A DNA stretch of 64,000 bases from Octopus bimaculoides (GCF_001194135.2 NC_068982.1:163872095-163936094); one strand, 5' to 3'; numbered from the stretch's first letter, positions 2,496 to 41,955 are shown. The notes: a model not told the origin generated them from the letters alone. Translations and numbers: made by a program.

Positions 2496-3672
2496 TGTGT
2501 GCATATCTTCCTTATGCATTTGAAAACTGAGGTGCTGATTTTACATACTGGTTTGAGAAAAATAAGTTATATTTTAGTCTTTTACTCCACACAATTGGAA
2601 TTATGTTTAATTAAAATAACTCTATATCAGATCTTAATTTTGGTGACAAGTTAGTAGATAGAGTCTTCTAATAATAGTTTTGTAGCACTAGTGTTATTTT
2701 TCTAAACTTTAATTTATTTGGTGATTAATAAAAATAATTACTAGCAATGCTAGCACCTGTAACTTACTAGACTCAACTCTATAACAAAAATTATCGTATC
2801 TGTAAAAAGAAACAATATTAGATAGAGCTTAATTAAAATCATTAAAAGTTTTAAAAGTTCATTATAGGATTTTAAAATATTTTTGTCTGTCAATTATGGT
2901 TATCGCCATAAAATAATTAATTCTTCTCATATATTTTGTGAAGATATTGTAGTAATTAAAAAGAAAAAAACGTTATTTTGTATTTTCAAGAATCTAGGAT
3001 TGGTAAAAAAAATTCAACTTTTAGTCAATAAAATTTGAATAAACATTTTAAAATCTTGAAATAAAAAAGAAAGAATAGTACAGACTCTAAAGAAAAACCA
3101 GAATTTTAATACATATACCTATATTAGTACTCAGAATGTTAGTATTAATACAGCATTGCAGTCAGAATTGCAGCTAACTGAATTAATGGATTTATAGGCC
3201 CACACTAAACATGAGATATGAATCATGCTGTATTCATCTCCTTAGCTGTGAATATGTATCAGATTTATCATAGAGCTCACCATAAAAATATGGTTTACTT
3301 TATAATTGACAAATGGTTTGTTTTGCTGTTTAAATCCTTCCTTGAATATAATTTGGAAAAGAATAGGAGTTATTGATTTTCCTTAGATAAACCACAATAA
3401 CTAATCCCCTGGGTAATTTTGTATCCTTTTGACTGAATCTGTTTTGAAACTCCCACTGTGTATGCTTATATTGGATTTATTCAAGGGAAATGTGTTAAAT
3501 ACAACCCTTTTGATTTATAATATGAGATGTATTAGTCTTCTTATGACTGGTATTGGCTTAAGGGACATGTCACGTACAAGTATGGTAAAATCAGGAATTT
3601 GAGGAAATTGATGAAGTGTAGTGGTAAGAGTTAGTCCATGGTTTGAACAATAAAGTTTTGGGCCTTGCTATT

Positions 3673-3746
3673 TGTTGTGTGAAAGTAGAACACCCTTATT
3701 TGGTTGGCTCCTAATGGACTGTGCCACAATAAAAATGGACTTGCGC

Positions 3747-3788
<42 letters not shown>

Positions 3789-3800
3789 CGACCTTGAAAA
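3673..3800 (+). repeat. 5' LTR head, containing a (GA)n run
   Basis: tgttgtgtgaaagtagaacaccc...gagtcggcgaccttgaaaa aligns with 6125-6223. Confidence 0.8.
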
Positions 3801-3978
3801 GAACTGTGTTGTTCAGTGTTGAATCAATGATTGGTGCGGATAGGTTATCCTTTATTGAAGGTCCTCCCTAGTGGGGTTACCTATTGTTGGAACTGTTAAA
3901 CCATTGTTGATTGGCTGTTGTATTGTTTGGTTTTGCTTTTATTTTCTCCTTCAGTTGGGGCGAAAATAGCAGTAAGCA

Positions 3979-5322
3979 ATGGAAGTGTTGCAAACATGTG
4001 TTGAGAGCTATGCTTCAGTAGCAGGTTGTGAGAATATAACAGCCACTGTTAACCAGCTGGAAGTGAAGGAAGTATCTGTGGATTTAGAAATATTAAAAAG
4101 CAGCAAGGAATTAATTCAAAGAGAGAGAGAGAGAGGTCAAGACTAAAATTGACCACACCTGGAAGATGTAACAAGAAGGAAAAATAAAAAAATGGTGGTG
4201 TATAGAATCCTATCACTTACAAGCAAGAAAATAGAGATAGCCAGTGAGGAAGCAATAGAAGAGTGCTTGGAAGAAATAAAGAGCGACATTAATTTTTCTG
4301 CAGAGGGAGAAAATTCGGCACAGTGGAGGTGCACGGTCCTACCATAGAGAACGCAGTAAAACATTCCTCTACAACATTGAAAACAGAAGAATGGGCACTC
4401 CTGCTAACCTATGTCGGTAAATGAGTGAGGATTGGCTGGGTGCCCCCTGAGATTGCCGAGATGTGGCTGCTTGCAGCAATCTTAACGGGAACAAAAGAGG
4501 TCCCAGGAGTGCTGCAGGTAAGTCGGACAAAGCAAGTGAACTGTTGGGGATATGGCCTGGAAGTTATAATCCAGGCCACCTCACTGGACTTGCAAGAAAT
4601 TGTAGAAGAAATAGAGCTACCAGACGAAGTAAAGCTGCGTGTGGTGGTGGTGGAGGGAAAACCTCCTATCTGCTTCCATTGCAGAAAGAGGGGGCACATA
4701 AAGGCGAGCTGCCCCTTTTATAACAACTAGATACCAGCGGAGGAGAAGCAAGAAGAGAACAACAACAGAGGAGAGAAGATAGAGGAAACTATAGAAAAAG
4801 CAAATGTGAAAAGCAGAGACGAGGGATTCCAGGAGATATAAAATAAAAAGAGGAAGGACCTAAAAAATTCTTCTCCCCGAAGAACCCGAAGAAGAAGAAA
4901 AAGAAAGAAGTAAGTAGCATATAAGCACCCACACAGTCTACCACACCGCCGCAAACACCCAAGAAAACCACAGACATCCCAGAATCTCCAGATAAGCATA
5001 CACTAGTAGAAGCACATATAGACACACAAGCAGAGACACAAACATCACAGGCCAGTCATAGAAGAAGGGCGTATCTGACAAAATATTGTGACGTGCATGG
5101 CCATTGAAAAAAAAAATTGTAAAAATCAAATTGATAATAAGAGTTGAACTGCCTGAAGAGTGGTGCGTACCGGGTATGAAATGCATATTAATAGACATGA
5201 ACAGTTATAAAAAATTAAAAGGAATTTTTGGCAATGACTTAGACCCACCAGGGCGAGAGATGAGATATGATTCTCTACCTCCCGTGGTAGAATTTGAACA
5301 TTTGAGACAATATATGATCTAA
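3979..5322 (+). pseudogene. Tx1/L1-type ORF1-like protein, copy A (frameshifted): RRM-like region, CCHC knuckle, K/E-rich linker, conserved C-terminus
   Basis: Translated blocks include SYASVA, RKFGTVEVH, EWALLLTYVGK, VRIGWVPPEI, WGYGLEV, GKPPICFHCRKRGHIKASC (knuckle at 4671-4712) and RYDSLPPVVEF...* (stop 5320-5322). No ORF2 follows. Confidence 0.75.
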
Positions 5323-5339
5323 TACGGTAATTCTAATTT

Positions 5340-6070
5340 GATAAACATTGGTGTAATTGTTCGTTTGTTATAGAGTGCTAGATACAATTGTGTCAGATAA
5401 TGGCACACAATTCACGGCAAAGGAGTTCAAAAATTTCTGTAAGTCAATCCAGATGAAGCATGTGTTAACATCGCTATAACATCCAAGGTCAAATGAGTTA
5501 GCGGAAAGATTTGTCAACAGATTCAAGAGAGCCTTAAGAAAGACCAGATGGGAAGATTTTGAAGATAGAAATATGACAAAGTTTACAGAATAACATCGAA
5601 TCCAAATACAGAGTCGGGTAGGTCACCTGCAGATTTGATGTTCTCCAGAAAGATTCGTTCTGTGTTTGACAAATTGTTGCCGAGTAGGAAACGGAAAATT
5701 CAAAATTCAGGAAGTAAAACTAAATTTTCTAATACAGGTGACAAAGTGTATTCTAAAATGTATAAAAATGGAAAACAAGTCTGGGAACAAGGTAATTTAA
5801 CTGGACGTCTGGGTAATGTGATGTACATGGTAAAAGGACCAAAATATGAACACAGAAGGCATTTTAACCAATTAAAGAAAGGATACACCAAAAATCAAGA
5901 AAGGTGAGATGAGTCAATGGATATATGGTAAGATATGTTCGAGGTCCCAGAAACACAAGTGAAAGCAGAACCGACACGTAGGTCGAACAGGAAAAGAAAA
6001 CAAAGAGATATGATGGAAATTAATGCCAGGAGAAAGAGATATGCCAGTTTCTCTCCAAGGAAATAAAATT
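5340..6070 (+). pseudogene. Ty3/gypsy integrase core and C-terminus remnant
   Basis: DTIVSDNGTQFTAKEFKNFC...HPRSNELAERFV, followed by SPADLMFSRKIRSVFDKL...WEQG...RRHFNQL, with stops and frameshifts. Confidence 0.85.
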
Positions 6071-6113
6071 AATAAAAAAAAAGAATAAATAAAAAAAGGA
6101 CAAAGCCAATCTC

Positions 6114-6124
6114 AAATGGGGAAG
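6114..6124 (+). other. Polypurine tract of the gypsy element
   Basis: aaatggggaag lies immediately 5' of the TGTTG that starts the 3' LTR at 6125. Confidence 0.75.
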
Positions 6125-6223
6125 TGTTGTGTGGAAGTAGAACACCCCTATTTTGTTGGCGCCTAATAGACTGTGCCACAATATAAATGGACATGCGTAG
6201 AGAGAGTCGGTGAGCTGTGTAAA

Positions 6224-7781
6224 TCTGCGTCGTATTTGAGTGAGTAGAAGTGTGAGTACTGCAGTTGTTGGCCTGTTATTTTCTGAATTGATGCATTGTT
6301 GTTGTTGAATTTGTTGGGATCTTTATTTGTCTTCCCCATTTGTGGGTGAAGTAGTGAGCGGTGGACCGGTGCAGGTGGGCAGTTGTGCTGCAGTGACTGG
6401 TGGGGCTGCTGCGAGTCAGTGAAGTGGAAGTTGGGGACGGGAATTTCGAGAGGTGTAGCGACTTGTTGAAGGAGGGAGACTGTCTTGGGCTGGCACCTCC
6501 CAGGGAAGTTATTGAGAGTGCCGAGAGGGGAGCTATTATCTGTGGAGTGTTGAAGATGGCAGCGAGGAAGTTCGGCACGGTGGGGGTGCACTTTGCAAGC
6601 GAAAATGAAGCGGAGAAGTACTCCACTGTGGCCTTGAGGTCGGCTGAGTGGGCACTTCTACCTACATACTGTGGCAAACGTACGGCCAGAGTAAGGATAG
6701 GTAGAGTTCCCCCTGAAATTGACGAGGCATGGCTGGTGGCAGCCATCCTCTACCATACAGAAGAAGATGTAGAAATTTTGAAAATGTCCAAAACTACGCA
6801 GGTGAACTGATGGGGATATGGTCTAGAGGTCACAGTCCATATAAGCCTACCAGACCTCCATAAGATTGTGGAAGAGCTGGTTTTGCCGGATGAAACTAGA
6901 TTGAGGATTGTTGTGGTGGTTAGACCTCCAATATGTTTTTTGTGTGGAGTAAGGGGACACATGAAGGCTAAGTGTCCCCAGAAACACGAGGAAGAAATAA
7001 TAGAAAAAGAAATTCAAGAAGAAGAGAGTACAGCTGTAGAGGAGGAGAAAATGGAGGAGCAATTTACGGTGGTGAAAAGAAAAAAGAACTTAGAATCACC
7101 ACCAAAATTCTCTAAAGAGAAAAAAAAAGAAAGACAAACGAAGAGGAGAACAAGAAAGAACAGAGAAAATGGAAAATCAAATGAACAATCAAGTGAAGTG
7201 CGAACGTACGAACCGTCGCCTTCAACTAGCAAGGAAGAAGGAATACGAAAGAAGAAAGAAAACGAAAGAGACAGCGAAGTAGAGACAGAGGCAATTATAA
7301 CGGACAAAAAAAAGCGGTGAAGGATATCAGAGAACGATGCCTGCAGGAAGAAACTTGAGAAACTTCATAGCATATGAAAAAGCGTCGAAATTGAAAAGAG
7401 GGTAACAAAAATGAAGAATGTTATCAAAATAAAATTGGCAAACCATGAAGGTAAGAAGGGAGAGAGAAAGAGGGGAGAGGTTAGTAGAACTATTTGGAAA
7501 AAATAGAGTTGAAATATCACCACTTCAGTATAGATACGACGAGCTGCCGCCTGTTGTAATTTTTGACGATATAGTACAGTATTCGTTGTAATTTTGTGTT
7601 AAAAAAAAGATACAAGACTGTAAAGTAAAACTATAATTTAAAAACAGTAAAATAAAACCACATGCTTTCATCACATTGATAATTCATCCGATATGTATTT
7701 ATATGTACCCCAATGTCTTGTTTTGTCTGTCTTTGTGGTGTCCCCTCTTTATAAAGGCCATGTGCCTAAATAAAAGAAATA
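6224..7781 (+). mobile_element. ORF1-only (HAL1-like) non-LTR element, copy B, apparently full length
   Basis: Has a 12-bp TSD, an A-rich 3' end (cctaaataaaagaaata), a single ORF1-like reading frame, and no endonuclease or RT. Confidence 0.7.
6370..7591 (+). pseudogene. Tx1/L1-type ORF1-like protein, copy B
   Basis: ORF-track frames 6400-6810 and 6868-7320 are the same frame, split by one TGA at 6808-6810. The knuckle CFLCGVRGHMKAKC is at 6934-6975. After a frameshift the C-terminus reads RYDELPPVVIFDDIVQYSL* (stop 7589-7591). Confidence 0.75.
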
Positions 7782-7942
7782 GAGCTGTGTAAAGCTGATT
7801 GTTGCGTATTGTCGAGTGTAATTACAAGTATTGTGTATCTTGAGTAGAACGATTTGCGAGGACGTTATTTATCATCCCGTTATATCGTACGTAGAAAGTG
7901 TGATACAACACTATTCTTTTGAAAATATGAAATAGAGCAAAT

Positions 7943-12930: not shown

Positions 12931-13593
12931 GGCTGTTCAAGTGCGTTCTTTTAAATAGAAAAACAGTTAGTATGAATCACCATAAGACATTTTTGTGTAT
13001 AAATATATTGTTTATTCTGTGTTCACCTTTTGTGGTGGAAGAATGTAGTATGATACAAAGATATGTGTGTTTACATACAAAGAAAATTTTGCTTTTTGCT
13101 TTTGCATTGAAAGAAGTAACATAATATTTGTATTACAGTATGTATGCATGTGTGTAATGGGAAGCCATTTTGAGAAAGTGTGTGTGATAAAATACCTTCG
13201 TTTACAAACCATATATCTTGTGTCGAGGTGAATAGACATGTGAGTCGCACGTGGAAGATTGCGCGTGGAGCTGCAGAGAAGATATGTGTCTTTGACCAAA
13301 GCCTGACAGGAACTGAGGCAAATTCTACAGTAGACCCAGAACGAGGCTGTTCAAGTGCGTGATATTAAATAGAAAAACAGTATGAATCACCATAAGACAT
13401 TTTTGTGTATAGATATATTGTTTATTCTGTGTTCACCTTTTGTGGTGGAAGAATGTAGTATGATACAAAGATATGTGTGTTTACATACAAAGAAAGTTTT
13501 GATTTTTGCTTTTGCACTGAAAGAAGTAACATAATATTTGTATTACAGTATGTATGCATGTGTGTAAAGAGAAGTCATTTTGAGAAAGTGTGT
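12931..13593. repeat. About 250-bp direct repeat (12931-13183 and 13345-13593) around a 161-bp spacer
   Basis: Near-identical blocks ggctgttcaagtgcg...ttttgagaaagtgtgt. Confidence 0.85.
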
Positions 13594-13734
13594 AGCTTTG
13601 CCACATAGCCTCCTGCTAGACTTGAAAAAGTCAAGAAAAGGTAAAGAGATGGCGCATGTAAACATGCAGTGTAGAAAAGCAGGTAAGAACATGGAATACA
13701 AGCAGAAGAATGCAATACAACAAAAAATGAGAAA

Positions 13735-15712
13735 TCCAAGTGTCTGGTTTTTCTCGGAGAGTACTTGTTAGGCTTCGAGCGCAGGGCAAAGGTGAGTGGA
13801 TAGTGGTCTGTAAAAATCGTGAATTGGCGTCCCTCGAGTATGTGCCAGAAATGTTTGACTGCTAAATACATAGCTAACAGCTCCCGTCCGAAAGTGCTGT
13901 AGTGAGTTTCAGCTGGTTTAAGCTGCCGAGAGAAAAAGGCAAGAGGCTGGAGTTGTTGCTGGTGAAATTGCTGTAACACCACGCCTATGGCGGTGTTGGA
14001 TGCATCCACTACAAAGGAAAAGCTGAACGTCCACGACAGGGTGGGAAAGAAGTGGTGCCTGAGTGAGTTGCTGCTTTGCTGTGTTGAAGGAGTCTAGCTG
14101 GGTGGAGTCCAACGCTATCGGCTCATTCCTCTTTTTGCTATTCCGAAGGAGCGTGTTTAGCGGATATAGGATTTCAGCTGAGTGAGGAACAAAGCACCGA
14201 TAGAAGTTGAAAAGTCCCAAGAAATGTCGGAGCTGACGTAACGAGGTGGATGGAGGTAACTTCTCAGGCAGTGGCGATATGCCTTCGGGGCTGATGATGT
14301 GACCTAGGAAGGTCAAAGAAGATGCGCTGAAGACATATTTGGTAGGGTTGATCCGCACTTGGTAAGTTTTGAATCGCTCGAACAGCTGACGTATATGATG
14401 GAGATGTTCCTCGGGTGAGGCGCTAGCTATCAAGATGTCGATGTACGCATAGATGATGCCTAAGTCTCGGACGACTTCGTTTATGAACCTTTGAAATGTA
14501 ATGGCTGAATTCCGCAAACCAAATGGCATAGTTAGGAATTCGAAGGCGCCAAAAGGAGTGGTCACGGCAGTCTTTGGAATATCCTCTGGATTTATCTGAT
14601 GGTATGACTTAACCAAGTCGAGTTTGGTGAATACTCTGCAGTTGTGGTGAGATGACGCAAAATCCTGATTGTGGGGTATTGGGTATCTGTCAGGCACCGT
14701 GATGGAGTTTAATCTCCTGTAGTCACCAGTGAACCGCCAGTCCTCGGATCGCTTTGGAACCATGTGCAAGAGTGGTGCCCAGGGGCTATTAGAGAGGCGG
14801 ATGTTGCCCAACTGGACCATGTGGTTAAATTCCGCCTTTAGCTTCTTCGAGAAGAGGCGGCGAGGGCGAGAAAAAACCGGAGCACCTTTAGTTTCGATGA
14901 AATGGGTGGTGGTGTGAATTGGAGTAGCAGTAAAAAAAATTAGGTTAGTCAGCTCCGGATATGAGTTTATGAGTGCATGGTATAGGTCGTCTGTGGCAAC
15001 AATGAAAAAGACTAGACTAACCGCAGGGGTTAATGGCCTTTTACCTGGGATAGAAAGTTCTGTGGTCGCGTCCCATAAGCACCGAGTGCGCATGTCCACA
15101 AGCAGGTGAAAGTGGTGCAAAAAGTCTGCACCTAATATTAGGTAAGGGAGATCTGCGACTGTAAAAATCCACTTGAAGTCACGTCGCAGATCTAAATCCA
15201 ACGAACGAGATATCTGGCCGAAAGTTGGAATCGGTGAATGGTTCACCGCCTGTAGAGTCACTGGTGATAACAGCTGCAGAGAATGTGCCGTGCTGGTTGG
15301 TCGTTTTCCTGTTGAGAAAAAGTACAGGGTTTGGGCACGTTTACGTGCTGAATCTTGAAAACTTGGCATGGTATCCGCATATGGATAAATGAGCAGAGGA
15401 CGAGCGACGGCGAGGTGAGAAGGAGCGATCGAAAGAACGCCGTATGGATGAACGTAACCTGCAAGTGCGAAGGAGCTGCGTTTCTCTCGTTAATTCAGCT
15501 ATCGCCTTTAGGATAGCAGCCGAAGCAAAGTCCTTATCAGTGGAAACTGACGCTACTGGTGGGTATACAGCGGTATCCGGTGGTACTGGGGTCGGCTTGG
15601 TGGTGTTGCCGGTATACTCTATGATTCTGTCGGCGGTGGAGGCTGTTTGCTCGACGTGAGTCGTCTCCACCATAGAGGTTAGGATGGCTTGAACGTTAGA
15701 GTGCAACCGGAG
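13735..15712 (-). pseudogene. Ty3/gypsy gag-pol fragment (gag C-terminus, partial protease, RT, RNase H; no integrase)
   Basis: gag ...CGYHAKF; ILGADFL; [28 protein letters not shown] and YID(D)IL with one Asp lost; RNase [19 protein letters not shown] and FTDHYPL. Confidence 0.9.
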
Positions 15713-15769
15713 AAAAATAGTTGTTTCAATAAAGCACAATCAGCAGGTGCATTTTGGGCCAATTCCTAA

Positions 15770-15915: not shown

Positions 15916-18900
15916 ATTTCTATAACTTTTTTTTTTAGATATAATGTGTATAGGACAAAATTATCTAATGTGTTCTTAATTTTTGAGATGGTAGGATAAT
16001 ACTTGGGAGTTTAGACAGCTATTTCTACCAAGTAAGACAATCATTTAGAGGTCCCCTTAATAGTTTTTCACTCTTCTGTTGGTGAAAGTTGCTTAAATGG
16101 CAACCATCCTGTTCTCCTTTTCATCTATAGTTCATTTCAAATTACAATATTTTAACGTGTATAAGAAACTTCCTGAGTTTGGGGCGCTTAAAATTTAGAA
16201 AAAAAACTTTTGTAAGGGATTATAATACTATCTATGTATAAGAAAATCCCATATATTTTGAATCTAATTTTTGATTAGAAAAAGGGTTCCTTATACACGT
16301 TAAAATACGGTACATTGCTCAGTGTTTCCCTTCTTTAAGATACTAGAGTTTGTTATGCACAAAGATTGTCTTGTTTTTATCTCTTGAAAACCTTTGTTGG
16401 CTCATTTTTGTTCTATATTTTGAAGAACAGTGAGGTCAGCCAAACTTATAGAATACTAGATAATTAAATATGTCTACAGTTCAGTGTTTTGACAGACAGT
16501 GAAGACTACCAAGCCTGGAGACTTATGGATAGGTAAATAGTCTCACAGTCTCACAGTTCTGTTTTGAAGATCCAGTGAGATGACAAAACTGGTAGAATAC
16601 TGTCTCTACAGGTTTTAATCTATCTTCTCACATTCAGAACAGCATTATGCTTCATCTGTCAAGAATTGATAAAATAGTAACATACTTTTTTGTACTTATG
16701 TATGTAATACCAGATTTACATATAGTGAGGCCTTATGCAAAAAAGCTTAGCAGACCTTTGCTAAAAAAATTCCACTGGAAGGTTTCAAAAAGGAAAATTG
16801 AAAACATATAGGCTATTTAATTATTTTGAGGCCACTGCATATTGTGAGACCTTAAGCTGCAGCTTGTTTATTTGTGCCTAAATCCATCACTGCATGAATG
16901 CTTATATTTTCTTTAGTTTAGTACTTTCATATTATTTCTCAAGAACTCTCAAGAAATCTGATATGGAATATAACAGTTGGTGGAATGGAAGAAGTTAGAA
17001 GTAGTGGAGATTGTTAGGCAAATTTCATGCAGGAAATAATAAATCATTTTCTTATAACAATACTGGAATCATTTCAGTCAAGTCTACATCAGCTTATCAT
17101 GAAGACTGACTGTCTGCCTGCACAGTCAATCAAAATCCTTATTTACATACAGCAGAGGATTGTGGATTGTAGAGATAACAGAAATAGTAAAACATCGAAG
17201 CAGATGTATTTCAGTATTTAGACACATCGTTTTGGTGTGAAGTTCAAATCTTATTAGAATCTAGTGTGTCAGTCAGTTGCTAAAATAATTATCCTTTATA
17301 TACTTGTACTTAAAAAAAAAGCTAATATCATTATAATAATAGAGTGGTATCTTGGCCTAGTCATTACAGTGTCTAGTAAAATGCCTTGCTGTATTTCTTC
17401 TGACATTTTATGCTCAAATCCCATTGCACTTAATCTTTTTGGGGTTGATAACGAAAGTATCATTTGAGTATTTTTAATTGAAAAAAACCCTTCCTCACTC
17501 AAAGAGGCTGGTAGTGGCCTTAAATCTGTGTTAACATTGTACAAGACTCAAACTGTAAAACTGAAGCAACATTTCCAACAGAGAAAAAAAGCTAAGCAAC
17601 TATTTCACTCACGTTTGTGAAACCAAAAATAAAAGCAAATGAAATGTAATATTGCTACTGAAGTTAAGGAGAGACATGAAATAAAACATAAAATCTGATA
17701 CAGATCTTAACCCTCCAAGAAACACTGGAAAGTCCTTTTTAAGAATAATAAGATATGAATAACTATAAACTTGTTCACTGCAAAGATTATATATGAGTAC
17801 TTAAAATGAAAAGCTTAGACTAAATAAACAACAACTAAAGACTGGTATGGAGTGCCAACAACTTTATAACATCTCACTGAGAATGCTGCTTGCCAGTGGT
17901 GCAAGACAAAGATCCCCAAATACCACACCATTTACAAAAAGACAAAAGAATCTGCTATCAATAAAGCGTAGGTTGTGTAAAAGTCAAATGCGAAGATATT
18001 AGCCACATAATTGCCAATTAAAAGAATGCCCTTTAGAAACATCTTCACATGTGGCATGGTGTGGTAATCAGAGCAGTCTGGAATAGAGTGAGAAAGGAAA
18101 AAAGGACAACAAATGATGACAGGGAAAAATAGCATTGGTGGAATTCTAAGAATTAAATCAACCAAACTGATATTATTGTCTGCAACTACAAAATAAAGAT
18201 ATACCCTATTGTGGAAATCAGCTGCTCCCTTGACATCATGTAGGGAGAAAAATACAGGTAAAGGAGTCCTGCTTGATCATTGAAGAGGAGGCTGCAAATC
18301 AAGGGCACAAAAATATACTTTCACTTTTACACCCATTACACTGTGTAACAAAATTAACATTTTTTTTTTTGTCTTTGATCAGTAAGTGTTATTTTTTATT
18401 TGCTTCTATCCAGAAATCAAAGGAAATGACTATTATTCCCTTCAAACTTTGCTTTTGTGACCTGGACATCAATGTTTTGAACCTGACCTATTTTCCATTA
18501 CATTTCAGACAGACTCAGCACTGAGTTGCTATAGTAGAAATATGGTTATTGCAAATACTCTGCTCAGTACCACAGGTTTGCTTGTCAGTTGCTTGACCTT
18601 AACTATTTGAGCATATCTCTTAGTGGCTGACAATATGTATATCTCTGATCATGAGCAAGAGTTGTGGGGGGAGTATCATAGCCATGTGTTGAAAGGGATT
18701 CTTTGGGGTTTGAATACATGTAACAAAAGCAACGTTTGAAGGAAATAGCCATTTTTCATACTTTCTAGGGATAAGCAAATAGAATATAACAGCTGCTACC
18801 CGAGGAAAAATGTCATGTTACACAGTGATATTATTGAAGTGGTAAGATAGGCATCAACTGGCTGGATCAAAGCATAGCTGAACATGAATTCTTGGATAAA

Positions 18901-27849: not shown

Positions 27850-28530
27850 TTTGTGTAGCTTATTTGGTCACCAAAAAAACAAACAGGTACAGATTATAAA
27901 CAATGAAAGGCCGGTTTTGGTGATTCATTTGACAGAGGTATTAGAGAGCCAATTCGATGATAAACCTGACCTTGGATCTTGAAAGTTTGCATAAAATCTG
28001 GCGCAGTTAAATTTCTTGTGGCTCCAAATGATGTCAACTGTAGTGCAGCATTGTATTGTCTAATTTTGTTTTGGAAGTGCTTGATCAGTTGATGACAACA
28101 GTTTCTTCAATGGCTCTGGAGGTTGGGGGATTGCAGGGAGTTTAACCTTTCCACCACTGCAGCACAGTGCAGGTGTCTCTCCAGGCCACCTCCTTGCTTT
28201 ATGATGTATGCACTCAGTTGTCATTGCACCAATGGAAACTCTAGTGTCATCTGCATAATGAACTACTGGATCATATTTGAAAGCTGCTTCATAGAAGTTG
28301 CTACCTTGAGCTGTTGCAACTGCTCTTCGTACTGCAGTGGAGATCCTATTCCTTGTCAGCCGTGCATACCTCTGTTCATTAGTTTGTGATGCTCTGGCTT
28401 TTGTAGTGCACAGTCTGTTCGTCTCTTGGTATGCTTCCCTTTTTGTAGCTGTCTCTCTTTCCTTGGACACAGACATTCTTTTGGCTGACCTTGACATTGT
28501 AGACAAATTTGATACTTTCTTTCCAGGCAT
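27850..28530 (-). pseudogene. Helitron RepHel N-terminal fragment
   Basis: AAFKYDP...IGAMTTEC...GETPALCCSGGKVKLP...PPEPL; after a frameshift IRQYNAALQLTSFGA...FKIQGQVYHRIGSL. A possible A|TC 5' end is at 28787. Confidence 0.85.
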
Positions 28531-29186
28531 GGTAATATAGGTATACAAAAATACATGGGTTCTGCAGATAGTAAACAATGAAAATAACTGGGTAACGGAA
28601 ATTATATTTCTTAATACAACGGACGGAAAGTAAATTAGAAATTTTTACGGAAAATAAAGAACTGTACGGGCTGAAGCGAAATTTGTGATTGAACCAAAGA
28701 GCCAGTATCGAAGGAACCAGATAAAGAGATATAGAGAGATAAAGGTAGATAGAGGTGGATAGAGAGGTATAGATAGAGAGATATAGATGTCACTGACGCA
28801 AGAAAATATGTTGAAAAACTTTCAAAGACGTGAATCTAATATCAAAAGTAACATTTAAAATTGTTTTTATGACCAATGGATGTAAGGAAGACAATTTCTG
28901 AAAGTTACTTCGTAAAAAAAGTTACCTCTGTACGCCACGTAACCCAGGAACGGGTTTTTTCTGCCCGTTACTCATTATGTGAAAACTTTTAAGAGTCTAA
29001 AACCACCCCTGGAACATAAATAATGTATGTTTCCAGTTTGGAGAAAATCAGTTGAAAAATACGCCGTTATAATCTTTTATACACACACAGAGACTGTATA
29101 GATAAATACATGTATGTATGTATACTGTTTTGTCTGGGGAGAGTCATTCTCTTTTAGTGCCTTATAAATCCAAATCCCAAAACGAA

Positions 29187-41811: not shown

Positions 41812-41955
41812 TATGTGTCACACTGAATCTCCCAGAACTACGTTAAATGTACACGTGTCTGTGGAGTGCTCAGCCGCTTGCACGTTAATTTCACGAGCAA
41901 GCTGTTCCGTTGTTCGCATCAGCTTGGACTTTTGTCGTCGTAACCGACAGAATGC
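41812..41955. mobile_element. Interspersed repeat, family C fragment
   Basis: Matches 39690-39800. Confidence 0.55.

What the first reader, a model, noticed from the sequence alone, without database searches (positions are those of the whole stretch)
3673..7910. Two distinct ORF1-only (HAL1-like) Tx1-type elements at the same site in both LTRs of one gypsy provirus
Seen in sequence: the provirus is one insertion (CTATT TSD, TGTTG/CAACA termini, LTR heads about 90% identical). In the 3' LTR, a 1558-bp element is bracketed by a 12-bp duplication (gagctgtgtaaa) and ends in an A-rich tail. It encodes only an RRM-like plus CCHC protein. In the 5' LTR, LTR homology stops at the same position (about 3800) and a second element with a homologous ORF begins. 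The two ORFs are far more diverged than the LTR heads, and many differences are synonymous (for example ggcctggaagtt versus ggtctagaggtc, both GLEV). Established knowledge: reverse transcription makes the two LTRs identical at integration; Tx1-clade LINEs include sequence-specific inserters, some into other transposons; ORF1-only HAL1 elements exist for L1. Inference: two subfamilies of a non-autonomous, ORF1-encoding element hit the same LTR site independently after integration. That would be an LTR-targeting parasite of a gypsy family, needing an autonomous partner to supply endonuclease and RT. I do not know of this combination being described in molluscs.
Basis: partly seen in the sequence, partly recalled or inferred. 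Interest (0 to 1): 0.85.

Follow-up and report, generated by a model that had tools for sequence, protein, structure and literature searches.

The report
ORF1-only LINE copies inside gypsy LTRs
An old, gutted gypsy-type retrotransposon in an octopus genome carries a LINE-derived copy encoding an RNA-binding ORF1 protein just after the promoter of each end repeat; the two copies belong to anciently separated subfamilies, which hints at, but does not prove, a preference for that LTR spot.

Summary
Bases 3673-7910 are one degenerate Ty3/gypsy insertion: CTATT duplication, TGTTG...CAACA ends, LTR heads 90% identical. Of its own genes, only the integrase C-terminus survives.

The 3' LTR holds a 1558-bp unit between exact 12-bp repeats. 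The 5' LTR loses high identity at the matching point, and a homologous unit follows.

The ORF is a LINE Type-I ORF1, not a gag. It has two tandem RRMs (AlphaFold pLDDT 86.6), one CCHC knuckle and a conserved C-terminal motif. In Octopus vulgaris, O. sinensis and Argonauta hians, relatives sit upstream of an APE-RT ORF2 that aligns end to end with human L1 ORF2p.

The 3' copy keeps the 3'-terminal module of those full-length LINEs but has no ORF2, so it is HAL1-like. An independent ORF1-only copy with a 15-bp duplication lies in non-LTR DNA in O. vulgaris. The 5' copy is cut just after ORF1, so its ORF2 status is unknown.

The two copies are saturated at synonymous sites (pS 0.73, pN 0.30). They were therefore acquired separately.

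LTR targeting is not shown: other family members sit in a microsatellite, in unique DNA or in head-to-tail arrays. "Same site" holds only to within about 50 bp. A recombination route during reverse transcription remains open.

The parts
3668..3672 (.). Left copy of the 5-bp target-site duplication (CTATT) of the gypsy insertion
   Evidence: Read directly; matches 7911-7915 (flanks).
3673..3792 (+). 5' LTR head: U3 with a TATA/AATAAA-like box at about 3728-3735, an expanded (GA)n at 3755-3785, then GAGAGTCGGCGA. There is no U5 tail and no PBS after it.
   Evidence: 82 bp at 90.2% to 6125-6206. The global alignment carries identity to 3792 = 6214. The LTR tail was not found in the 5' half.
3793..3850 (+). 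Zone of uncertain origin between the LTR head and the LINE 5' UTR. The 5' boundary of the 5' LINE copy lies somewhere in it.
   Evidence: The counterpart of the 12-mer matches at only 8/12, with indels. There is weak similarity to the start of the LTR tail (274/5000 shuffles) and none to the start of X3. The MAFFT alignment does not settle it.
3851..5322 (+). 5' LINE copy (X5): 5' UTR plus a broken ORF1 (about 3966-5322). It ends at the ORF1 stop, so the 3' UTR and 3' module are missing and ORF2 status is unknown.
   Evidence: The 5' UTR is similar to that of the L010 LINE copy (0/1000 shuffles). blastx to family proteins gives a best hit of 46% (P0008). It has at least 5 in-frame stops and at least 2 frame changes.
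5323..5356 (.). Non-homologous joint between the end of X5 and the integrase remnant
   Evidence: No similarity to the X3 3' UTR or to the integrase of L001.
5357..6060 (+). Broken remnant of the gypsy pol gene: only about the last third of integrase (end of the core domain plus the C-terminus)
   Evidence: Pfam rve 4.2e-06 and rve_3, both below cut-off. 58% and 41% identity to the integrase ORFs of the L001 gypsy. At least 2 stops and at least 1 frame change.
6114..6124 (+). Polypurine-tract-like run (aaatggggaag) abutting the 3' LTR
   Evidence: Read directly.
6125..6223 (+). 3' LTR head: U3 with TATAAA at 6182-6187, then the left copy of the 12-bp repeat (6212-6223), which starts 30 nt after the first T of the TATA box
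   Evidence: That the repeat starts at the predicted transcription start is inference.
6224..7781 (+). 3' LINE copy (X3): a complete ORF2-less unit with 5' UTR, broken ORF1 (about 6349-7591), a 190-nt 3' UTR carrying the family's 3' terminal module, and AATAAA
   Evidence: Flanked by exact 12-bp repeats (15/16 over 16 nt). ORF1 is 75% identical to P0001. The 3' module aligns with full-length LINEs L008, L009 and L012 and with the ORF1-only L011. No ORF2 in the window. At least 3 stops, 1 frame change and one in-frame deletion of about 28 codons.
7782..7793 (+). Right copy of the 12-bp repeat (target-site duplication of X3)
7794..7910 (+). 3' LTR tail (U5) ending in CAACA
   Evidence: Head plus tail comes to 216 bp. 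The related gypsy in L001 has an insert-free 3' LTR of similar size that also carries CAACA at about the same distance.
7911..7915 (.). Right copy of the 5-bp target-site duplication (CTATT)

Best explanation
Bases 3673-7910 are one old Ty3/gypsy provirus. It has lost U5, PBS, gag, protease, RT, RNase H and most of integrase.

Each LTR carries a copy of a LINE-derived element about 30-90 nt downstream of its TATA box, around the predicted transcription start. The protein of this element is a Type-I ORF1p: an N-terminal helical part, two tandem RRMs, one CCHC knuckle, a K/E-rich linker and a conserved C-terminal motif. The family's autonomous members in octopods carry an L1-like ORF2 (APE endonuclease, RT, zf-RVT).

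The 3' LTR copy is an ORF2-less, HAL1-like derivative. It keeps the 5' UTR, ORF1 and the 3' terminal module of the full-length LINEs. It was inserted by target-primed reverse transcription, leaving a 12-16-bp duplication, and must have used a partner's ORF2 protein in trans.

The 5' LTR copy comes from a different, anciently separated subfamily, so it was acquired separately. The most likely route (inferred, not shown) is a second target-primed insertion within about 50 bp of the same LTR point. A later deletion from just after ORF1 to mid-integrase would then have removed the rest.

The shared spot is best explained by a local preference of these elements or their partner endonuclease for this promoter-proximal LTR stretch, or by better survival or expression of copies placed behind the LTR promoter. 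A family-wide strict LTR specificity is not indicated. All reading frames at this locus are broken, so nothing here is functional now.
For: One insertion:
- 5-bp duplication, TG..CA ends, PPT-like run and 90% identical heads.

ORF identity:
- AlphaFold model pLDDT 86.6, pTM 0.71, with two beta-alpha-beta-beta-alpha-beta units.
- Top PDB fold matches are all tandem-RRM proteins. No capsid-like match in the viral library.
- zf-CCHC is weak in the window copies and above cut-off in relatives.
- The RRM+CCHC combination is the published Type I ORF1p (PMC5203782).

Family is a LINE:
- ORF1 is followed by ORF2 in L003 (Exo_endo_phos).
- L009 has an intact 1132-aa ORF2 with Exo_endo_phos + RVT_1 + zf-RVT. 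It aligns over residues 3-867 with human L1 ORF2p, E 2.5e-71.
- L008 and L012 also carry ORF2.

The 5' UTR belongs to the LINE, not to the LTR:
- The X3 and X5 5' UTRs match the L010 LINE 5' UTR (0/1000 shuffles each).

X3 is an ORF2-less unit inserted by target-primed reverse transcription:
- Exact 12-bp repeats, 15/16 over 16 nt.
- 3' terminal module shared with full-length LINEs.
- No ORF2 in the window.
- Independent precedent: L011 in O. vulgaris is a 1.73-kb ORF1-only unit with an intact ORF1, the same 3' module and a 15-bp duplication at 14/15.

Separate acquisition:
- pS 0.73 and pN 0.30 between the two ORF1s, against 10% divergence of the heads.
- The best family hits differ: X5 46% to P0008, X3 75% to P0001.
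Against: - The 3' junction of the 5' copy is gone, so neither a duplication nor an insertion mechanism can be shown for it.
- The 12-mer counterpart upstream of the 5' copy matches at only 8/12 with indels, while the head is 90% identical. Under a plain insertion, this stretch should be LTR-like.
- The 5' boundary is uncertain by about 50 bp.
- The 5' end lacks U5 and PBS. The same 'LTR head -> ORF1-like -> truncated pol -> complete 3' LTR' layout recurs in L001 from another organism. Three separate post-integration events at each locus is less economical than one recombination event.
- Other family copies are not in LTRs.
- Similarity between the sequence after the left repeat and the sequence after the right repeat continues weakly beyond the 12-mer (158/5000 shuffles). 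A simple duplication does not predict this.
- The window comes from a gapped draft assembly, so a chimeric join inside a repeat cannot be excluded.
Confidence: 0.5

Rival explanations
1. Recombinant reverse transcription. The LINE unit first entered the R/U5 border of an LTR of this gypsy lineage. From then on it was transcribed from the LTR promoter as an R-bearing RNA.

Inside a gypsy particle, minus-strand synthesis switched from the gypsy RNA (within pol) to such an RNA of another subfamily and ran to its 5' R. The strand end then paired with R of the plus-strand strong-stop DNA and copied U3.

The integrated product is U3-R-ORF1unit-(joint)-partial pol-PPT-complete 3' LTR, formed in one cycle. 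On this reading the 5' copy was never inserted into this provirus after integration.
For: - It explains in one step the missing U5 and PBS, the non-homologous joint right after ORF1, the normal TG..CA ends and the 5-bp duplication.
- It predicts that identity between the LTRs should drop at the U3/R border rather than after the 12-mer. That is what is seen: 90% up to 3792, then 8/12.
- The 12-mer starts 30 nt after the TATA box, at the predicted transcription start.
- The same layout occurs in L001: 82-bp heads at 88%, ORF1-like residues fused in frame to mid-RT, an insert-free 3' LTR, and an integrase 58% identical to the window's.
- A third ORF1-end-next-to-RNase-H scrap was seen in L010, by eye only.
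Against: - It needs a non-homologous template switch plus a strand transfer on a 12-nt, imperfectly matching R. Both are rare.
- Nothing shows that the LINE-derived RNA is packaged in gypsy particles.
- It still presupposes earlier insertions of two subfamilies at the same LTR point elsewhere in the genome.
- L001 was found through the fused ORF, so it is not an unbiased sample.
- The L010 case is unverified and lies next to an assembly gap.
Confidence: 0.27
2. The ORF1-like gene is this gypsy lineage's own gag substitute. On this reading the lineage captured a LINE ORF1, so that 'LTR head - leader - ORF1 - pol' is the native order, and the 3' LTR copy is a secondary event.
For: The ORF1 unit sits in the gag position, downstream of the 5' LTR head and upstream of pol remnants, in both the window and L001. 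No other gag is present at either locus.
Against: - The 5' UTR and ORF1 are shared with bona fide LINEs that carry APE-RT ORF2s and have no LTRs.
- The fold is tandem RRM, not a capsid.
- There is no PBS or U5 between the LTR head and the unit.
- The 3' copy is bounded by a duplication inside the LTR.
- None of 148 family proteins carries protease, RT or integrase domains.
Confidence: 0.05
3. Assembly artefact. On this reading the contig joins different genomic repeat copies through the shared LTR head or ORF1 sequence, and the two-subfamily arrangement does not exist in the animal.
For: The window is a draft scaffold with many N gaps. Repeats of this kind are prone to chimeric joins.
Against: - There is no gap inside 3673-7910.
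- The two heads differ at 10% of positions and the ORF1 units at more than 33%, so there is little exact sequence to mis-join on.
- The matching 5-bp duplication and TG..CA ends tie the two outer borders together.
Confidence: 0.06

Closest known systems
HAL1 ('half-L1') elements of mammals
   Same: A non-autonomous derivative of an L1-type LINE that keeps ORF1 and the LINE ends, has lost ORF2 and depends on a partner's ORF2 protein (definition from PMC5753468). X3 and the L011 unit have this layout.
   Different: The ORF1 here is Type I (two RRMs plus CCHC), not the coiled-coil/RRM/CTD Type II of mammalian L1. The host is a cephalopod. Amplification as an ORF1-only family is shown only by two unrelated copies (X3 and L011), not by a census.
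Tx1-group LINEs (Tx1L of Xenopus and relatives) with target-specific insertion
   Same: They belong to the L1 superclade, have an RRM/CCHC-type ORF1 (PMC5203782) and are known for target-specific insertion (PMC3747384). From my own knowledge, Tx1L inserts into another transposon. Two copies near one LTR point, one copy inside an (ATT)n tract (L008) and head-to-tail arrays (L009) all fit that style.
   Different: Clade membership was not tested because the tools hold no reference RT sequences. No common target sequence was found among the copies examined.
Type I ORF1p of non-LTR retrotransposons (Khazina and Weichenrieder classes, as cited in PMC5203782)
   Same: At least one RRM followed by a CCHC knuckle, encoded upstream of ORF2.
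   Different: This protein has two tandem RRMs, and an extra conserved C-terminal motif (...Y..LK..F..D...PPVV.F...) after a K/E-rich linker. No Pfam family matches that motif.
Defective recombinant retroviruses formed by template switching during reverse transcription (transduction-type products)
   Same: Foreign RNA replaces the 5' internal region, a non-homologous joint lies within pol, and the outer ends and duplication are normal. This matches the left half of the locus and L001.
   Different: Classical products keep two complete LTRs and a PBS, whereas here the 5' LTR lacks U5 and PBS. The foreign RNA is itself a retroelement. No evidence of packaging exists.

Membership tests
Type I LINE ORF1p | At least one RRM domain | tested here: met
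   AlphaFold model on a 13-sequence alignment: pLDDT 86.6, two RRM-type units. Foldseek PDB hits are tandem-RRM proteins, E 4e-5 to 1e-3. The model is of relative P0003, which is 41-49% identical to the window copies.
Type I LINE ORF1p | CCHC zinc knuckle after the RRM | tested here: met
   CX2CX4HX4C is present in both copies. Pfam zf-CCHC scores 19.3 and 17.6 bits, just below the 20.8 cut-off. It is above cut-off in relatives P0008 and P0149.
Type I LINE ORF1p | Encoded upstream of an endonuclease/RT ORF2 in a non-LTR element | tested here: met
   Met for relatives L003, L008, L009 and L012. Not met for the window copies themselves.
L1/Tx1 superclade of LINEs | ORF2 with an N-terminal APE endonuclease, an RT and a C-terminal zinc motif, closest to L1 ORF2p | tested here: met
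   L009 ORF2 has Exo_endo_phos + RVT_1 + zf-RVT. Against human L1 ORF2p it scores E 2.5e-71 over residues 3-867, against 1e-24 for R2. This applies to relatives, whose ORF1 is 30-37% identical to the window copies.
Tx1 clade | RT phylogeny placing ORF2 with Tx1 reference elements | not testable with these tools
   No Tx1 reference sequences are available through the tools, and the window copies have no ORF2.
Tx1 clade | Sequence-specific insertion into one repeated target | tested here: inconclusive
   Two copies lie within about 50 bp of one LTR point. Other copies lie in (ATT)n, in unique DNA or in arrays, with no shared target.
HAL1-like ORF1-only non-autonomous LINE derivative | ORF1 kept, ORF2 absent, LINE 5' and 3' ends kept | tested here: met
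   Met for X3 and for L011. Cannot be told for X5, whose 3' part is missing.
HAL1-like ORF1-only non-autonomous LINE derivative | Amplified as an ORF1-only family with its own copies and duplications | not testable with these tools
   This needs a genome-wide census. Only two ORF1-only copies from different subfamilies and species were seen.
Ty3/gypsy LTR retrotransposon (the host provirus) | Direct LTRs with TG..CA ends and a 4-6-bp target duplication | tested here: met
   TGTTG..CAACA ends, CTATT duplication and heads 90% identical. The 5' LTR is incomplete.
Ty3/gypsy LTR retrotransposon (the host provirus) | PBS after the 5' LTR and PPT before the 3' LTR | tested here: inconclusive
   A PPT-like run is present at 6114-6124. 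No PBS is present because U5 and the leader are missing.
Ty3/gypsy LTR retrotransposon (the host provirus) | pol order RT - RNase H - integrase | tested here: inconclusive
   Only an integrase remnant survives (rve below cut-off). It is 58% identical to the integrase of the L001 element, whose order is RVT_1 - RT_RNaseH - Integrase_H2C2/rve.
Retroviral-type Gag | All-helical capsid fold upstream of the knuckle | tested here: not met
   The model is alpha/beta with tandem RRMs. No Gag or capsid match in BFVD. No Gag family in Pfam.

The most novel reading that the evidence does not exclude
A lineage of LINE-derived ORF1 units lives inside the promoter-proximal R/U5 border of gypsy LTRs. The units are transcribed from the LTR promoter and are repeatedly carried into new chimeric proviruses (LTR head - ORF1 unit - partial pol - LTR) by template switching inside gypsy particles. 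This would be a standing LINE-LTR partnership seen in octopus and in at least one other eukaryote (L001), not just nested junk.
Probability: 0.15. Interest if true: 0.8.

Novelty: new variant of a known kind. Interest (0 to 1): 0.5.

Why it matters
If the census bears it out, cephalopods hold HAL1-like, ORF1-only derivatives of a Type-I-ORF1 LINE family. So far that layout is documented for mammalian L1.

Purifying selection on ORF1 across subfamilies (pN well below pS) argues that ORF1p is needed in cis even when ORF2p comes from a partner.

Two old subfamilies sitting at one LTR spot, together with the recurring ORF1-pol chimeras, would give a concrete case for studying how LINEs and LTR elements exploit each other's promoters or replication. 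It would also help annotate octopus genomes, where these ORFs are currently listed as 'uncharacterized CCHC-type proteins' or are fused into host gene models.

If the census is negative, this locus is simply an unusual nested insertion.

Tried and rejected
- **First structure model.** The 6-sequence alignment gave pLDDT 36 and was unusable. It was replaced by a 13-sequence model.
- **Genomic context look-ups.** P0003, P0005 and a window ORF were not on record.
- **Profile protein searches.** The word-index searches returned only 3-4 hits each.
- **Related-locus searches.** P0149 in viral contigs found nothing. P0011 in metagenomes gave four matches confined to its repetitive Q/T/H-rich linker, which I judged spurious. 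The LTR-head pattern in metagenome contigs found nothing.
- **LTR tail in the 5' half.** Searched for and not found above chance.
- **ORF as gag.** Considered and rejected (see rivals).
- **Possible LTR head upstream of the L010 copy.** It shares the 8-mer TGTTGTGT, but similarity is at chance level (632/1000 shuffles) and there is no second copy in the locus.
- **Shared target between L011 and the L009 inter-unit segment.** It looked possible by eye, but blastn gave only low-complexity matches.
- **(GA)n as a common target.** (GA)n tracts lie near some copies (window 5' LTR, L008, L009, L011), but at variable distances of hundreds to thousands of bases. This was dropped.
- **DNA-level homology of the L001 LTR or ORF1 unit with the window.** Only a 62-bp integrase stretch matched.
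- **Fixing the 5' boundary of X5.** Multiple alignment did not settle it.

Full report
**Observation.** CTATT|TGTTG opens the element at 3668-3677 and CAACA|CTATT closes it at 7906-7915. The two LTR heads (3673-3754 and 6125-6206) are 82 bp at 90.2% identity. After a (GA)n expansion in the 5' copy, identity continues to 3792, which matches 6214.

GAGCTGTGTAAA occurs exactly twice in the window, at 6212-6223 and 7782-7793. The repeat reaches 16 nt at 15/16. It brackets a 1558-bp unit that ends in AATAAAAGAAATA.

Between the two halves lie a broken remnant of the last third of an integrase (Pfam rve and rve_3 below cut-off) and a polypurine-like run that abuts the 3' LTR. No other copy of the LTR or of the ORF lies in the 64 kb.

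**What the ORF is.** Both units encode one long, now broken, reading frame. It has an N-terminal part, a middle part ending in CX2CX4HX4C, a K/E-rich linker and a C-terminal motif (...RYD.LPPVV.F...).

A profile of the conserved part finds 722 cluster representatives at E<=0.001 among 1.84 billion proteins. The named ones come from Octopus bimaculoides, O. sinensis, O. vulgaris and Argonauta hians. None of 148 members carries protease, RT, integrase or endonuclease domains.

With a 13-sequence alignment, AlphaFold gives pLDDT 86.6 and two beta-alpha-beta-beta-alpha-beta units. The best PDB matches are all tandem-RRM proteins: Hsh49, raver1, SFPQ/NONO, U2AF65 and hnRNP A1 UP1. The viral library gives no capsid-like match. 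Two RRMs plus a CCHC knuckle is the published Type I ORF1p of non-LTR elements (PMC5203782).

**The family is a LINE.** Genomic context could be fetched for several relatives.
- L009 (O. vulgaris) holds three head-to-tail units of about 5.28 kb. Each has the ORF1 followed by an ORF2. One ORF2 is intact at 1132 aa, with Exo_endo_phos, RVT_1 and zf-RVT. It aligns over residues 3-867 with human L1 ORF2p (E 2.5e-71), against 1e-24 for R2.
- L012 (A. hians) has ORF1 plus an ORF2 that is 52% identical to that of L009.
- L008 (O. sinensis) has an intact 615-aa ORF1 and a degenerate ORF2. The element lies inside an (ATT)n tract.
- L003 (unknown eukaryote, ENA) has ORF1 followed 11 bp later by an APE domain whose best PDB match is the L1 endonuclease.
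- L002 shows an APE-like ORF2 start about 400 bp after ORF1. This was seen by eye only.

The family therefore belongs to the L1/Tx1 superclade. Tx1-clade membership could not be tested.

**The 3' LTR copy is an ORF2-less derivative.** After the ORF1 stop, X3 has about 190 nt and no ORF2-like sequence. No ORF2-like sequence exists anywhere in the window. Its last roughly 50 nt align with the 3' ends of the full-length LINEs L008, L009 and L012. Its 5' UTR matches that of another O. bimaculoides copy, L010 (0/1000 shuffles). It thus keeps both LINE ends and ORF1, which is the HAL1 layout (PMC5753468).

An independent example is L011 in O. vulgaris. It is a 1.73-kb unit with an intact 379-aa ORF1, no ORF2 and the same 3' module. 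A 15-bp duplication (14/15) flanks it, in sequence that is not an LTR. ORF1-only units of this family therefore do insert by target-primed reverse transcription, and not only into LTRs.

X3 is inactive: at least three in-frame stops, one frame change and one in-frame deletion of about 28 codons.

**The 5' LTR copy.** X5 has the LINE 5' UTR (0/1000 shuffles against L010) and the whole ORF1. The ORF1 carries at least five stops and at least two frame changes.

X5 stops within about 30 nt after the ORF1 stop, where a non-homologous joint leads into the integrase remnant. Its 3' UTR, any duplication, the LTR's U5, the PBS, gag and most of pol are all missing. The LTR tail is not detectable in the 5' half. 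Whether X5 ever had an ORF2 cannot be told.

Its 5' boundary is also soft. High LTR identity ends at 3792. The counterpart of the 12-mer matches at only 8/12, with indels. Alignments place the start of the LINE 5' UTR anywhere between 3793 and 3850. 'Same site' is therefore true only to within about 50 bp.

**Two separate acquisitions.** Over 169 codons compared as they stand, pS is 0.73 (saturated) and pN is 0.30. The LTR heads differ by only 10%. X5 is closest to P0008 (46%) and X3 to P0001 (75%).

The two units therefore come from subfamilies that diverged under purifying selection long before this provirus integrated. Reverse transcription makes both LTRs of a provirus identical, so the units cannot be the two LTR copies of one unit.

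**Mechanism.** For X3, what is shown is a duplication-flanked insertion of an ORF2-less LINE derivative into the LTR. Its left repeat starts 30 nt after the first T of TATAAA, which is the predicted transcription start. That coincidence is inference from the sequence.

For X5, the simplest route is a second insertion near the same point followed by a deletion of several kilobases. I give this 0.5.

The main rival (0.27) is recombination during reverse transcription. An LTR-promoted RNA carrying R and the ORF1 unit serves as acceptor for a template switch from pol. The strand then pairs through R with the plus-strand strong-stop DNA and copies U3. The result is a provirus whose 5' end is U3-R-unit without U5 or PBS.

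This rival explains three things: the missing U5 and PBS, the drop of identity at the U3/R border rather than after the 12-mer, and the parallel found in L001. In L001, in an unrelated eukaryotic contig, 82-bp LTR heads (88% identical) flank an ORF1-like segment fused in frame to the middle of a gypsy RT, followed by RNase H, integrase and an insert-free 3' LTR. The ORF1-like segment scores hhalign probability 97%. The integrase is 58% identical to the window's.

A third ORF1-end-next-to-RNase-H scrap was seen by eye in L010, beside an assembly gap.

The rival still presupposes that both subfamilies sat at this LTR point elsewhere. Either way, an association of these units with the promoter-proximal part of this LTR is implied. 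What remains open is whether that association comes from endonuclease or target preference, from homology between LINE ends and the target, or from selection for copies behind a promoter. Weak similarity continuing beyond the 12-mer on both sides of X3 (158/5000 shuffles) is unexplained.

**Rejected readings.** The unit is not the gypsy's gag. Its 5' UTR and ORF1 are shared with LTR-less LINEs, the fold is RRM rather than capsid, and there is no PBS. An assembly artefact is unlikely: there is no gap inside the element, the halves are too diverged to mis-join, and the outer borders match. It cannot be excluded on a gapped draft.

**Comparison and novelty.** The closest known kinds are four:
- HAL1: same layout, but a different ORF1 type and a different host.
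- Tx1-group LINEs: same superclade and known target specificity (PMC3747384), but membership and specificity are untested here.
- Type I ORF1p: membership met.
- Transduction-type recombinant proviruses: this resembles the left half of the locus.

I rate it a new variant of a known kind. The double occupancy and the recurring ORF1-pol chimeras are the unusual part, and they rest on very few loci.

**Limits.** All context loci were reached through annotated or called ORFs, so they are a small and biased sample. No census of the source genome was possible. The clade, the targeting and the route of the 5' copy remain open. All proposed follow-up is descriptive.

Noticed in passing
L009 4400-20000 (O. 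vulgaris OX597840.1): Three head-to-tail units of about 5.28 kb of the full-length LINE, with inter-unit segments 95-97% identical. One ORF2 is intact at 1132 aa (APE + RT + zf-RVT). The 5' UTR contains an internal poly(A) run.
   Followed up: partly
L008 9720-15400 (O. sinensis CM016872.1): A full-length LINE of the family with an intact 615-aa ORF1, flanked on both sides by an (ATT)n microsatellite. This suggests insertion into the repeat.
   Followed up: partly
L011 7905-9666 (O. vulgaris OX597833.1): A 1.73-kb ORF1-only unit with an intact ORF1 and a 15-bp duplication (14/15). Upstream flank has a 148-nt inverted repeat (7674-7820, 76%), perhaps a MITE-like element. The 3' UTR holds short TTGTAAAGTT-type tandem repeats.
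   Followed up: partly
L001 7200-12110 (ENA ERZ21867824 ctg120020l): A gypsy provirus of a related lineage in an unknown eukaryote, with an ORF1-like segment fused in frame to mid-RT and a 5' LTR reduced to an 82-bp head. Both flanks are the same satellite of about 23 bp.
   Followed up: partly
L010 13560-13930 (O. bimaculoides CM046628.1): After a 2.1-kb assembly gap, a second ORF1 C-terminal-motif-like stretch is followed by a gypsy RNase-H-like scrap. Seen by eye in translations only. A Helitron-like N-terminal region lies further downstream at about 16130-16560.
   Followed up: no
window 3755-3785 vs 6200-6208: The (GA)n tract is about 30 nt long in the 5' LTR but only about 8 nt in the 3' LTR: a microsatellite expansion just upstream of the insertion zone.
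   Followed up: partly
window 13575-15739 (- strand): A second, unrelated LTR-retrotransposon pol fragment: a 483-aa ORF with RVT_1 (5.5e-26), followed by RT_RNaseH (1.1e-23).
   Followed up: partly
window 28060-28578 (- strand): A 172-aa ORF with a ...CCSGGKVKLP... motif that resembles Helitron N-terminal regions. This is from memory; there was no Pfam hit.
   Followed up: no
window, about 19.9-20.3, 27.0-27.6, 29.3-29.4, 31.2-31.7, 55.5-55.9 and 62.3-62.5 kb: Runs of N (assembly gaps), mostly next to microsatellites. The window comes from a gapped draft scaffold.
   Followed up: no
window 41827-41946 (- strand): A 40-aa stretch 75% identical to residues 183-222 of P0087, an LDL-receptor-class-A protein model. 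Possibly a host exon or another repeat.
   Followed up: no
proteins P0023, P0087, P0005: Public gene models fuse this ORF1 to host domains (WD40 in P0023, LDLa in P0087) or to the C-terminal motif of a neighbouring copy (P0005). Database annotations of this family are unreliable.
   Followed up: partly
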